A DNA stretch of 63,040 nt, the filler included, from Octopus bimaculoides (taxonomy: Eukaryota): the NCBI RefSeq assembly GCF_001194135.2. It is 4 parts of 4 records of this genome, joined end to end, with 100 filler letters (N's around TTAATTAATTAA, not from the genome) between each part and the next. Parts side by side here need not be neighbours in the genome. Positions count along the whole stretch, not along the records: positions 28,044 to 40,275 come from NC_069001.1; 3 more parts are not named here. The stretch is one strand, 5' to 3'. Numbering within the stretch: position 1 is the stretch's first letter; each line of letters begins with the position of its first letter. Under the pieces are notes generated by a model. It saw only the letters and a list, made by a program, of their open reading frames with translations. It did not search any database and was not told the DNA's origin. The translations under genes and the position numbers were made by a program. Positions 34,651 to 37,600 of this stretch are shown one piece after another.

Positions 34651-37600
34651 GGGGGAATGGAGACAGAAAGAGTGGATGGAAGGAGAACCGAAGAATGATT
34701 AAATCAGTTCATTTGCAGAGGCATCGTGGGATATAAAGTTGTAATGGGAAAAGCTCGACTTTATACTCAAGAATGTGTATAGAGATGTACTTAAGAGTAT
34801 ATAGTTTGTGTATATACACATTAATGTGTGTGTATGTATGTATCAATGAATGAATGGATGGATGGATGCATGCATGCATGTATGTATATATTTATACACA
34901 GTAGCAAAGAAAAAAATTACAATAAATATATATGTAAAAATGTTCATTGTTACATACCTAAAGTTATACGTTCTTTAGATTCTGAAGGTAACAAGAACAT
35001 AAAAGGAATCAGTGCCGCGATTATTATAGCTGGGACAATCAGTACTTGTCCGGAGTATCCGAGGTGCCGGCGTAAAACGAATGTCACAACGTAAGTGACA
35101 TAGGACTGTATACAGCAGGAGTAGCTTTGTACCTGTATCTGTGACAAAGAACATGAAGAAGCATTTAAGCGTTGACGACATAAGAGAACGACATTGAAAA
35201 TCTTTTCTGCTCTAGGAACAAGGCCCGAAATTTNNNNNNNNNNNNNNNNNNNNNNNNNNNNNNNNNNNNNNNNNNNNNNNNNNNNNNNNNNNNNNNNNNN
35301 NNNNNNNNNNNNNNNNNNNNNNNNNNNNNNNNNNNNNNNNNNNNNNNNNNNNNNNNNNNNNNNNNNNNNNNNNNNNNNNNNNNNNNNNNNNNNNNNNNNN
35401 NNNNNNNNNNNNNNNNNNNNNNNNNNNNNNNNNNNNNNNNNNNNNNNNNNNNNNNNNNNNNNNNNNNNNNNNNNNNNNNNNNNNNNNNNNNNNNNNNNNN
35501 NNNNNNNNNNNNNNNNNNNNNNNNNNNNNNNNNNNNNNNNNNNNNNNNNNNNNNNNNNNNNNNNNNNNNNNNNNNNNNNNNNNNNNNNNNNNNNNNNNNN
35601 NNNNNNNNNNNNNNNNNNNNNNNNNNNNNNNNNNNNNNNNNNNNNNNNNNNNNNNNNNNNNNNNNNNNNNNNNNNNNNNNNNNNNNNNNNNNNNNNNNNN
35701 NNNNNNNNNNNNNNNNNNNNNNNNNNNNNNNNNNNNNNNNNNNNNNNNNNNNNNNNNNNNNNNNNNNNNNNNNNNNNNNNNNNNNNNNNNNNNNNNNNNN
35801 NNNNNNNNNNNNNNNNNNNNNNNNNNNNNNNNNNNNNNNNNNNNNNNNNNNNNNNNNNNNNNNNNNNNNNNNNNNNNNNNNNNNNNNNNNNNNNNNNNNN
35901 NNNNNNNNNNNNNNNNNNNNNNNNNNNNNNNNNNNNNNNNNNNNNNNNNNNNNNNNNNNNNNNNNNNNNNNNNNNNNNNNNNNNNNNNNNNNNNNNNNNN
36001 NNNNNNNNNNNNNNNNNNNNNNNNNNNNNNNNNNNNNNNNNNNNNNNNNNNNNNNNNNNNNNNNNNNNNNNNNNNNNNNNNNNNNNNNNNNNNNNNNNNN
36101 NNNNNNNNNNNNNNNNNNNNNNNNNNNNNNNNNNNNNNNNNNNNNNNNNNNNNNNNNNNNNNNNNNNNNNNNNNNATATATACGACAGGCTTCTTCCAGT
36201 TTCCGTCTACCAAATCCACTCACAAGGCTTTGGTCGGCCCGAGGCTATAGCAGAAGACACTCGCCCAAGGTGCCACGCAGTGGGACTGAACCCGGAACCA
36301 TGTGGTTGGTAAGCAAGCTACTTACCACTGAAAGGGATGAAAAGCAAAGTCGACCTCGAACTCTGAATATAAGAACGGACGAGATTCTGTTAAGCATATT
36401 ATCGTGAGTGCCATCGATTCTGATGATGATGATGATGATAATAATAATAATAATCGATGTGTTTCCTTACTTCGGACGTTGCGCTGACAATTTCCCATTT
36501 CTCATTAGGTACGTAACCATCCTCGATGATAGGACGAAATTTCGAGGTGAGATTCATTATGGAAGCGTCGTACACCCAGGATCCATATGAAAGTTTACAT
36601 GTCTGGATGTCAAAAGGGAATTTGGACATATCAAATGCACACACTGCTGAATGAGTGACTGGTGGAATGTAAGTTACTTCCCCAGAGCTTTTCAAATATA
36701 CGTTAATATCAAGTGTTGGAGGATTTCTCACACCTCGGCTGATAAAACAAAATAAAACGAAAATCATTGAAGTGTTAATAATACAGTTAGAATTATATTG
36801 TGTGTGTGTGCTACCAGTTTTAGTTATATTTGAAAGACACTGCTCTACAACGACCAGGTTTCATTAGAAAGTGAATAGTTTCACACTTTCAATTTGAACC
36901 AAAATTACAAAGTGTTGCATTACGAGAATTAACCGGTTACTTTAGTAGTAAAAAAGAGTTGTGCCAAAAACACAGTCTGTTTGGTAGCCTATNNNNNNNN
37001 NNNNNNNNNNNNNNNNNNNNNNNNNNNNNNNNNNNNNNNNNNNNNNNNNNNNNNNNNNNNNNNNNNNNNNNNNNNNNNNNNNNNNNNNNNNNNNNNNNNN
37101 NNNNNNNNNNNNNNNNNNNNNNNNNNNNNNNNNNNNNNNNNNNNNNNNNNNNNNNNNNNTATATAAAATTTATTAATGAGGGTAGAAATTGATATCAATC
37201 AATTAAAACCAGTGGTCTAGCATATTAAAAAAATCCGAAGATTAAAATTATATTACATACAAAATAAGAGGAATGACCAGCAAATGTGGATTCCTAAATG
37301 CTAGAAATAGATGCCGAATCATCTAACCACGAAAAAAATATGTTCTCAGTAGAAAATTTAGCGACGCAACAAACTGTAAACGAGCAGGACAAATGAAAAA
37401 TACTAAATTAAAAAACGATTAACCTACGTACCATAGTTTCACCTGTTAAAATTTACATAAGTAAATATCTGCAGGATCGTCAGCCTAAGTCTGTCTCTTT
37501 GAGATGCAATACACAGAACTAGACACAAGCCATACACCCGTAAGTGAACACGTGTAGAGATTCTGCTAATTACATTCAGTGTATCCTTTCAAATGTCTTC

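What the first reader, a model, noticed from the sequence alone, without database searches (positions are those of the whole stretch)
37421..37491. Sense-strand hammerhead inside an intron of the nAChR-like gene
Seen: a complete core (CUGACGA, GAAA, GUA) on the transcribed strand, 280 nt downstream of the exon B donor and enclosed by 75-bp inverted arms. It has a U:U at 10.1-11.1 and one G:G in stem I, so it is probably weakened. Inference: slow cleavage could compete with splicing and tune receptor mRNA output, and the arms offer an ADAR-type duplex next to an exon. It may equally be an inert relic that survived because it is inactivated.
Basis: partly seen in the sequence, partly recalled or inferred. 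Interest (0 to 1): 0.7.

Follow-up and report, generated by a model that had tools for sequence, protein, structure and literature searches.

The report
Transposon-borne hammerhead motif in octopus intron
The hammerhead-ribozyme-shaped sequence is real and not a chance match, but it arrived inside a small mobile element that inserted into this receptor gene's intron only in Octopus bimaculoides, so it is an ordinary transposon passenger and not a conserved regulator of the gene.

Summary
The piece is Octopus bimaculoides CM046621.1.

- **Motif.** All invariant hammerhead core bases are present, with three helices in type I topology, U.U at 10.1/11.1 and G.G at 1.2/2.2.
- **Element.** It lies in the unique centre of a 435-bp element (37254-37688) with 89-102-nt inverted arms.
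- **Not chance.** The descriptor fitted to it finds 3 strict (7 relaxed) further motifs in 130 kb of other octopod DNA, against about 0.01-0.06 hits per permuted-core decoy. All share a GAAAC-N(2-4)-GU-H near-palindromic helix III, none has G10.1-C11.1, and most have a long helix II. A covariance model built without the window copy recovers it (23.2 bits, E about 0.016).
- **Rfam.** Its hammerhead models detect neither this copy nor the two relatives tested.
- **Not conserved.** The syntenic O. vulgaris intron and an O. sinensis paralogue carry a (TA)n microsatellite at the point where the element starts.

Best reading: a Penelope-like-element/retrozyme-type hammerhead carried by a roughly 335-nt non-autonomous element, with an inverted truncated partner copy. 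As a lone copy it is probably weak. A role in tuning the receptor is unsupported. The long intronic RNA hairpin is the only robust consequence for the transcript.

The parts
37421..37491 (-). Type I hammerhead-shaped motif. Helix I 5' strand 37491-37484; core CUGACGA 37483-37477; helix II with long interior 37476-37441; G12-A15.1 37440-37437; helix III C-UAUG-G 37436-37431; U16.1 37430; A17 37429; predicted cut 37429|37428; helix I 3' strand 37428-37421.
   Evidence: Read directly from the sequence. It is the only descriptor hit in the piece. It is recovered by covariance model R1, built only from O. vulgaris and Argonauta motifs, at 23.2 bits and E about 0.016. No Rfam hammerhead hit at E<=10.
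37600..37688 (-). Upstream (5' in the transcript) inverted arm, extendable inward to 37587. Read here as an inverted, 5'-truncated copy of the element's 3' end.
   Evidence: the repeat finder I1 gives 102 nt at 90%. BLAST gives 89 nt at 95.5%. It pairs with the other arm over 79 contiguous base pairs in the RNA fold.
37254..37342 (-). Downstream (3') inverted arm, extendable inward to 37355. This is the 3'-terminal part of the full unit.
37343..37599 (-). Unique centre of the element. It holds the hammerhead motif. Centre plus 3' arm make a unit of about 333-346 nt.
   Evidence: The centre alone is not unusually structured (z = -1.9). In this context the hammerhead fold lies 4.5-17 kcal/mol above the minimum-energy fold.
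37689..37771 (-). First 83 nt of the intron, ending in a TA-rich stretch. It is alignable with O. vulgaris and O. sinensis up to the element boundary, which marks the insertion site in a (TA)n microsatellite.
   Evidence: Alignment A1; BLAST break at window 37684 <-> L012 5241.
37772..37926 (-). Exon B of the nAChR-like (Cys-loop) receptor gene; the donor GTAAGT starts at 37771.
   Evidence: Translation; Pfam Neur_chan_LBD 1.9e-40; 100% match to NCBI model P0005.
36465..36743 (-). Exon C (Cys-loop exon), the next exon downstream of the intron.
36993..37159 (.). Assembly gap (N) inside the same intron, 94 nt beyond the element. Anything hidden here, such as a second copy, cannot be seen.
   Evidence: the gap is also present in the chromosome-level record.

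Best explanation
The 71-nt segment is a genuine member of the metazoan retroelement-borne type I hammerhead class: short, near-palindromic helix III, thought to be active mainly as dimers. It is carried by a non-autonomous unit of about 335 nt.

**Shown.** That unit, together with an inverted 5'-truncated copy of its own 3' end (the 'arms'), is inserted at a (TA)n microsatellite in the exon B-C intron of this receptor gene. The insertion is present in O. bimaculoides and absent at the same site in O. vulgaris.

**Inferred from the literature on Penelope-like elements (PLEs) and retrozymes.** In such families the ribozyme processes the element's own multimeric or read-through transcripts. The PLE reverse transcriptase and GIY-YIG endonuclease mobilise the RNA, favour microsatellite targets, and often leave inverted partial copies.

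**Inferred for this copy.** It is a single monomer with a 2-bp helix III, U.U at 10.1/11.1 and G.G next to the cleavage site, and it is flanked by competing structure. I expect little or no self-cleavage from it, and no role in controlling the receptor.

**Robust physical consequence.** The pre-mRNA gains an RNA hairpin of about 90 bp, 84 nt downstream of the exon B donor.
For: 1. **Motif anatomy.** All core bases, type I topology, and ACUAUGGU self-pairs over 8 positions with two G.U pairs at -8.6 kcal/mol.
2. **Recurrence, strict descriptor.** In 139.8 kb of octopod DNA the strict descriptor hits 4 times, while 539 permuted-core decoys give 5 hits in total. All 4 true hits have helix III = A-U + C-G + tetraloop with GUA; the decoy hits are scattered.
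3. **Recurrence, relaxed descriptor.** 8 hits against a decoy mean of 0.056.
4. **Leave-one-out model.** A covariance model built without the window copy finds it at E about 0.016. It also finds a decayed Argonauta paralogue with the core intact and GAAA reduced to GAA.
5. **Family traits outside the descriptor.** Most have a long interrupted helix II with a distal hairpin. None has G-C at 10.1/11.1: U.U in 5, A-U in 2, G.U in 1, A.G in 1. Most have a microsatellite 40-210 nt downstream.
6. **PLE link.**
   - The O. vulgaris motif lies about 470 nt downstream of, and on the same strand as, a GIY-YIG endonuclease fragment (Pfam PF01541, 6e-6).
   - A second PLE endonuclease fragment sits in the orthologous O. 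vulgaris intron.
   - An Argonauta element has 209-nt inverted arms, each carrying a small hammerhead, with (TA)n on both sides.
   - PLE insertions are described as having inverted 5'-truncated copies and a microsatellite target bias (PMC8557442).
7. **Insertion.** Homology with O. vulgaris and O. sinensis ends at the element boundary, inside (TA)n.
8. **Precedents.**
   - Metazoan type I hammerheads have a 1-2-bp helix III with a small palindromic loop (PMC4209133).
   - Axolotl HHR_Amex2 has U.U at the base of helix II and a 2-bp helix III with tetraloop, and still cleaves, better as a dimer (PMC7229834).
   - In Xenopus, 44% of retrozyme copies lie in introns.
Against: - No other copy of this particular 435-bp element was found in about 130 kb of other octopod DNA. 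Conservation of the motif across copies of the same element is therefore untested.
- The element shows no sequence similarity to the PLE fragments seen, and there is no PLE coding remnant in the piece.
- Symmetric arms abutting TA are equally what a class II MITE with a TA target duplication looks like.
- Rfam hammerhead models do not score it.
- G10.1-C11.1, which Cervera and de la Pena list as highly conserved in PLE hammerheads, is absent.
- The descriptor was fitted post hoc to this copy.
- The hammerhead fold is not the minimum-energy fold: z = -0.89 for the motif alone, and +4.5 to +17 kcal/mol in context.
- No tandem partner is visible, so the retrozyme hallmark is unmet.
Confidence: 0.65

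Rival explanations
1. Class II MITE or foldback element (TA target duplication, about 90-bp terminal inverted repeats) whose internal region happens to carry, or once captured, a hammerhead motif. Transposition would be by a DNA transposase, and the ribozyme would be irrelevant to mobility.
For: Arms are symmetric to their very ends and flanked by TA on both sides. The element is 435 bp and AT-rich (35% GC). There is no coding capacity. The O. vulgaris intron holds another, unrelated inverted-repeat element.
Against: The insertion lies in a (TA)n tract, so a TA duplication cannot be told apart from the microsatellite. An Argonauta inverted-repeat element carries a hammerhead in each arm, which fits inverted retroelement copies better than transposase-binding ends. 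Hammerhead motifs of the same style recur in non-inverted units of about 330-340 nt.
Confidence: 0.2
2. Pure chance resemblance: core words and short helices that arose by accident in AT-rich repeat DNA.
For: The relaxed descriptor is expected about 350 times per 2.5-Gb genome. There is no Rfam hit. Folding is not significant. Several features are the ones chance would favour: long helix II, one helix I mismatch, A at position 17, and an unpaired 10.1/11.1.
Against: The same descriptor is 100-fold or more enriched over permuted-core decoys in independent octopod DNA, with concordant features the descriptor does not demand. The leave-one-out covariance model ranks this copy first among non-seed, non-paralogue hits.
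Confidence: 0.08
3. Co-opted intronic ribozyme. Slow sense-strand self-cleavage competes with splicing and tunes receptor mRNA, by analogy with the conserved intronic hammerheads of amniotes.
For: Sense orientation, 280 nt from a donor. The core is complete. U.U at 10.1/11.1 is compatible with activity in axolotl HHR_Amex2.
Against: Absent from the orthologous O. vulgaris intron and from the O. sinensis paralogue. It is part of a mobile element. Helix III is only 2 bp and no partner is visible. Hammerhead-cleaved introns are still spliced efficiently (PMC2995048).
Confidence: 0.04

Closest known systems
Type I hammerheads of metazoan non-LTR retrozymes, especially axolotl HHR_Amex2 (Cervera & de la Pena 2020, PMC7229834)
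   Same: Type I topology. Helix III is 2 bp capped by a tetraloop. U.U mismatch at the base of helix II. AT-rich unit within the 170-400-nt range. Predicted to be weak as a monomer and better as a dimer.
   Different: No tandem repeat is visible here (single unit plus an inverted partial copy). Helix II carries a 26-nt interior with an extra hairpin. The triplet is GUA. Activity and circular RNA are untested.
Minimal hammerheads in the pseudo-LTRs of Penelope-like elements (Cervera & de la Pena 2014, PMC4209133; Craig et al. 2021, PMC8557442)
   Same: Near-palindromic 15.2-16.2/loop 3 suited to dimer formation. Larger than usual helix II. Insertion at a microsatellite with an inverted 5'-truncated copy. 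PLE GIY-YIG fragments lie next to a sister motif and in the orthologous O. vulgaris intron.
   Different: No PLE open reading frame or pseudo-LTR is linked to this copy. The G10.1-C11.1 pair reported as highly conserved is absent; unpaired U's flank helix II on both sides.
Conserved intronic hammerheads HH9/HH10 of amniotes (de la Pena & Garcia-Robles 2010, cited in PMC7229834; Rfam RF02275, RF02277)
   Same: A sense-strand hammerhead inside an intron of a protein-coding gene.
   Different: Those are conserved at orthologous positions across amniotes and are recognised by Rfam models. This one is lineage-specific, transposon-borne and unrecognised by Rfam.
MITE / foldback inverted-repeat elements
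   Same: 435 bp, non-coding, about 90-bp terminal inverted repeats, TA at both junctions, forms a very stable hairpin.
   Different: No second copy was seen. The TA duplication is uninformative inside (TA)n. The internal hammerhead has no known place in DNA-transposon biology.

Membership tests
Hammerhead ribozyme (type I) | Invariant core C3 U4 G5 A6 N7 G8 A9, G12 A13 A14, A15.1-U16.1 pair, H17 | tested here: met
   CUGACGA ... GAAA ... U-A; A17 at 37429
Hammerhead ribozyme (type I) | Three helices around the core, with helix I open (type I) | tested here: met
   Helix I has 7 of 8 pairs (G.G at 1.2/2.2). Helix II has 4 bp plus a 6-bp distal hairpin. Helix III has 2 bp plus the UAUG loop.
Hammerhead ribozyme (type I) | G10.1-C11.1 pair at the base of helix II (near-universal, part of the metal site) | tested here: not met
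   U.U here. The pair is also absent in all 8 related octopod motifs. A natural precedent is axolotl HHR_Amex2.
Hammerhead ribozyme (type I) | Match to curated covariance models (Rfam RF00163 and related) | tested here: not met
   No hammerhead hit at E<=10 on 12 kb, 151 nt or 77 nt. The two Argonauta relatives tested are also missed, and nothing reached gathering score in L001/L012. The models appear not to cover this variant.
Hammerhead ribozyme (type I) | Loop 1 - loop 2 tertiary contact | not testable with these tools
   Internal loops exist in both helices, but no 3-D or covariation test was possible.
Hammerhead ribozyme (type I) | Site-specific self-cleavage | not testable with these tools
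   Needs in vitro transcription of monomer and dimer constructs.
PLE / retrozyme-type dimeric hammerhead | Helix III of 1-2 bp with a small palindromic loop, able to form an extended intermolecular helix III | tested here: met
   ACUAUGGU self-duplex of 8 pairs (2 G.U), -8.6 kcal/mol. Relatives have ACAAUUGU (three motifs) and ACUAGU (both arms of one element).
PLE / retrozyme-type dimeric hammerhead | Many dispersed genomic copies forming families | tested here: met
   8 motifs in 139.8 kb against a decoy mean of 0.056. Leave-one-out covariance model E about 0.016. An Argonauta paralogue pair exists. Copies of this exact element were not found.
PLE / retrozyme-type dimeric hammerhead | Located in a PLE pseudo-LTR, or in tandem repeats of about 170-400 bp | tested here: inconclusive
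   No tandem copy and no PLE open reading frame in the piece. The unit size of about 335 nt fits. A 167-nt gap lies 94 nt away. The sister motif in O. vulgaris lies next to a GIY-YIG fragment.
Conserved intronic hammerhead (HH9/HH10-like) | Presence at the orthologous intron position in related species | tested here: not met
   The syntenic O. vulgaris locus L012 and the O. sinensis paralogue L001 have (TA)n at that point and no element.
MITE (class II non-autonomous transposon) | Terminal inverted repeats plus a target-site duplication, in multiple copies | tested here: inconclusive
   Inverted repeats are present. TA at both ends is uninformative inside a TA tract. No second copy in about 130 kb.

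The most novel reading that the evidence does not exclude
Octopods carry an undescribed variant class of type I hammerheads. It has no G10.1-C11.1 pair (mostly U.U), a long interrupted helix II, mostly a GUA triplet and a palindromic helix III. It rides on elements of about 330 nt that depend on Penelope-like elements and target (TA)n, and Rfam models do not detect it. On this reading, this sense-strand intronic copy is still active (as a dimer, or with family RNAs in trans) and cuts the pre-mRNA of a fast-evolving chemosensory-type receptor gene, or feeds its 90-bp hairpin to ADAR.
Probability: 0.08. Interest if true: 0.55.

Novelty: new member of a known kind. Interest (0 to 1): 0.3.

Why it matters
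For the receptor gene it matters little. This is a lineage-specific transposon insertion in an intron, a common situation: 44% of Xenopus retrozyme copies are intronic.

The wider observation has modest value for ribozyme and transposon specialists. Octopod genomes appear rich in hammerhead motifs that curated models miss and that systematically lack the G10.1-C11.1 pair. That bears on how tolerant the hammerhead core is, and on how Penelope-like elements and their non-autonomous derivatives spread in cephalopods.

The near-perfect 90-bp intronic hairpin is a candidate hyper-editing substrate in an animal known for extensive RNA editing.

Tried and rejected
- **Rfam.** Searches at permissive thresholds found no hammerhead or other ribozyme family for the piece, the motif alone, or the relatives. 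Only microsatellite-driven miRNA look-alikes appeared.
- **Folding significance.** Not significant for the motif (z = -0.89), the element centre (z = -1.9) or the O. vulgaris unit (z = -0.8). There is no support for a rod-like retrozyme fold.
- **Public-collection scans for the arms.**
  - The metagenome scan returned 10 loci that share only 20-22 nt and belong to an unrelated repeat family.
  - The viral and prokaryote-genome scans were empty.
- **Exact-ORF and protein look-ups.**
  - An exact-ORF look-up found nothing, and P0002 is not on record.
  - A protein search with the O. vulgaris PLE endonuclease fragment found nothing, so octopus PLE loci could not be fetched.
- **Other copies of the 435-bp element.** None in L001, L012, L013 or L014.
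- **O. sinensis L001 as orthologue.** Rejected. It is a paralogue: 58% amino-acid identity, and only 74-83% nucleotide identity to the O. vulgaris locus.
- **Possible shared descent with an Argonauta motif.** An 11-nt identity inside helix II between this copy and L014 4117-4223 is suggestive only.
- **Second Argonauta inverted-repeat element.** L014 15109-15621 has CUGACGA in its centre but no GAAA, so it was not counted.
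Full report
**Locus**

The piece is Octopus bimaculoides. It matches GCA_001194135.2, CM046621.1 at 100% (window 28044-40275 = L013 70388-58157, reversed). The motif lies at about 4,816,090-4,816,160 of that record.

A Cys-loop receptor gene runs on the minus strand.
- Pfam gives Neur_chan_LBD at 1.9e-40 and Neur_chan_memb.
- NCBI's model P0005 is a chimera of two tandem paralogues. It uses exon B = 37926-37772 and exon C = about 36743-36465.
- The intron between them starts at 37771 (GTAAGT) and contains a 167-nt assembly gap.

**The observation**

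On the sense (minus) strand, 37491->37421 reads GACUUAGG-CUGACGA-U-CCUG-[26 nt with the hairpin AUUUAC/UUAU/GUAAAU]-CAGG-U-GAAA-C-UAUG-G-U-A|CGUAGGUU.
- Every invariant hammerhead position is present.
- The topology is type I.
- 10.1/11.1 is U.U and 1.2/2.2 is G.G.
- Helix III is 2 bp with a tetraloop.
- The predicted cut is 37429|37428, 280 nt after the donor.

The motif sits in the unique centre of an inverted-repeat element, 37254-37688.
- The arms are 89 nt at 95.5%, or 102 nt at 90% when extended.
- As RNA the element forms 79 contiguous pairs. The fold energy is -202 kcal/mol and z = -21.5.

**Chance or not**

A descriptor fitted to the motif gives one hit in the piece. Expected numbers are:
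- 1.4e-7 per bp from a first-order Markov model, which is 0.0014 per piece and about 345 per 2.5-Gb genome.
- 0.0013 per piece from local shuffles around each real core.

So chance is unlikely for one piece but not for a whole-genome scan.

Three further results count against a functional reading of this copy on its own.
- Rfam finds no hammerhead, even in a 77-nt search at E<=10.
- The motif's folding energy is unremarkable (z = -0.89).
- In context the hammerhead fold lies 4.5-17 kcal/mol above the minimum-energy fold.

Taken alone, the motif would be undecidable.

**Recurrence settles it**

The same descriptor was run on independent octopod DNA fetched through receptor homologues. It hit once in the O. 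vulgaris locus (L012) and twice in an Argonauta hians locus (L014).

Strict descriptor, over 139.8 kb:
- The true descriptor gives 4 hits.
- 539 descriptors with permuted cores give 5 hits in total.
- All four true hits share features the descriptor does not require: helix III = A-U + C-G + tetraloop, and GUA. The decoy hits vary.

Relaxed descriptor (helix I at 5 of 7 pairs or better, any helix III loop size):
- 8 true motifs against a decoy mean of 0.056.
- Helix III segments are ACAAUUGU (three motifs), ACUAGU (two, one in each arm of one element), ACUAUGGU (this copy), ACCCUGGU and ACGAUAGU.
- These are perfect or near palindromes, the signature of the metazoan dimer-forming type I class described in PMC4209133.

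Leave-one-out model:
- A covariance model was built only from the O. vulgaris motif and two Argonauta motifs. Their long helix II interiors were trimmed, as a modelling device.
- It recovers the window motif at 23.2 bits, E about 0.016 over 419 kb. The next unrelated hit is at E = 0.47.
- It also recovers a diverged Argonauta paralogue. There the region from helix I to helix I is the best-conserved part of a roughly 330-nt repeat, the core is intact, GAAA has lost one A, and 10.1/11.1 has become U.U.

Across the nine motifs, 10.1/11.1 is U.U in five, A-U in two, G.U in one and A.G in one. It parallels axolotl HHR_Amex2, which has U.U at the base of helix II and a 2-bp helix III with tetraloop, self-cleaves slowly as a monomer, and cleaves better as a dimer (PMC7229834).

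**What carries it**

The element is an insertion.
- The O. vulgaris locus L012 is collinear with the whole piece at 75-92% nucleotide identity, in coding and non-coding DNA.
- In the exon B-C intron, the alignment of O. bimaculoides, O. vulgaris and the O. sinensis paralogue runs for about 85 nt from the donor. It stops exactly where the element begins.
- At that point the other two species continue as a (TA)n/(TG)n microsatellite.

The other motifs sit in comparable settings.
- They lie in AT-rich units of about 330-340 nt.
- Most have a microsatellite 40-210 nt downstream.

Several observations tie them to Penelope-like elements (PLEs).
- The O. vulgaris motif is about 470 nt downstream of, and on the same strand as, a GIY-YIG endonuclease pseudogene fragment (PF01541, 6e-6).
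- A longer fragment, with the cysteine-rich linker typical of PLE endonucleases, lies in the orthologous O. vulgaris intron on the antisense strand.
- An Argonauta element (L014 11748-12240) has 209-nt inverted arms at 96%, a 78-nt centre, (TA)n on both sides, and one small hammerhead reading outward in each arm.

These features match published accounts.
- PLE insertions are described as having inverted 5'-truncated copies next to the element, and a bias for (TA)n and other microsatellites (PMC8557442).
- Animal retrozymes have been proposed to be non-autonomous PLE derivatives (bioRxiv 10.64898/2026.07.22.740005).

On this model the window element is a full unit of about 335 nt (37599/37586->37254) preceded by an inverted copy of its last roughly 90-100 nt. 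I rate this reading more likely than a class II MITE but cannot exclude the MITE reading. The ends are symmetric and abut TA. No second copy of this element was available in about 130 kb of octopod DNA.

**How it most likely works here**

The following steps are inferred, not shown.
- In its family, the ribozyme would process multimeric or read-through element RNA, mainly through dimers that extend helix III.
- In this intron there is one copy. It has a 2-bp helix III, a mismatch next to the scissile bond, competing local structure and no visible partner. I expect weak or no cleavage.
- Even if it cleaves slowly, introns cut by a hammerhead are reported to be spliced with similar efficiency. 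Only a fast ribozyme abolished splicing (Dye et al. 2006 and Bentley and co-workers, as summarised in PMC2995048).
- Given this and the absence from the orthologous intron, the proposal that it tunes receptor output is unsupported.
- The hairpin of about 90 bp, 84 nt from the donor, is the one solid structural consequence. ADAR hyper-editing of such a duplex is plausible from general knowledge and was not tested.

**Novelty**

Transposon-borne type I hammerheads, including intronic monomers, are well known in animals; 44% of Xenopus retrozyme copies are intronic. The giant squid genome paper lists 235 Rfam hammerhead-1 hits (PMC6962438).

This copy is a new member of a known kind. The octopod class seen here has no G10.1-C11.1, often a long interrupted helix II, mostly GUA, and is invisible to Rfam. 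It may be an undescribed variant. I sampled only 140 kb, and I found no paper describing octopus hammerheads.

**Verdict**

| Aspect | Judgement |
|---|---|
| Observation | Confirmed |
| Chance origin | Rejected |
| Membership of the retroelement-type hammerhead class | Supported by sequence evidence; catalysis untested |
| Gene-regulatory role | Not supported |
| Interest | 0.3 |

Noticed in passing
window 36465-38650 (exons A-C) versus 32755-35144 (TM exons); L012: Compared with the syntenic O. vulgaris gene, the ligand-binding-domain exons are only 61-71% identical in protein. The transmembrane exons are 86-95% identical, and flanking non-coding DNA is 82-90% identical in nucleotides. This points to a fast-evolving ligand-binding domain, as expected for octopus chemosensory-type nAChR-like receptors.
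   Followed up: partly
L013 10001-67431 (O. bimaculoides CM046621.1): The NCBI gene model P0005 (715 aa, named 'alpha-7') fuses the front half of an upstream paralogue with this gene. It is a likely mis-annotation across assembly gaps in a tandem receptor cluster.
   Followed up: partly
L012 6233-6700 (minus) and 3505-3843 (minus): Two 5'-truncated Penelope-like-element endonuclease fragments (Cys-rich linker plus GIY-YIG) lie in the O. vulgaris locus. One of them is inside the intron orthologous to the one studied, on the antisense strand.
   Followed up: partly
L014 11748-12240 (Argonauta hians): An inverted-repeat element with 209-nt arms (96%), a 78-nt centre and (TA)n on both sides. Each arm carries a compact hammerhead: CUGAUGA-U-ACAAA-ACAA-UUUGU-U-GAAAC-UA-GUU.
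   Followed up: partly
L014 15109-15621: Another inverted-repeat element (arms 126 nt at 93%, centre 261 nt), adjacent to a decayed hammerhead-bearing repeat. Its centre has CUGACGA but no GAAA.
   Followed up: no
L012 5440-5700: An unrelated short inverted-repeat element sits in the O. vulgaris orthologous intron, just after the (TA)n tract. The same microsatellite region has therefore been hit independently in two species.
   Followed up: no
window 36176-36328, 31249-31421, 31978-32189: SINE-like dispersed repeats with several 85-95% identical copies in the O. vulgaris, O. sinensis and O. bimaculoides loci.
   Followed up: no
window 28766-28855 and 37684-37754: Sub-threshold Rfam matches to mir-297, mir-466 and similar families fall on TA/TG microsatellite-like sequence and are low-complexity artefacts.
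   Followed up: yes
L002-L011 (JGI metagenome contigs Ga0182004, Ga0182126, Ga0182161): A 20-mer from the inverted arm occurs in ten contigs that form a repeat family of their own. They share only 20-22 nt with the octopus arm, so this is a coincidental match and not homology.
   Followed up: yes
window 37445-37470 versus L014 4117-4223: The helix II interior of this copy (CAGAT-ATTTACTTATG) shares an exact 11-mer plus CAGAT with the interior of one Argonauta motif. This is a weak hint of shared descent beyond the core.
   Followed up: partly
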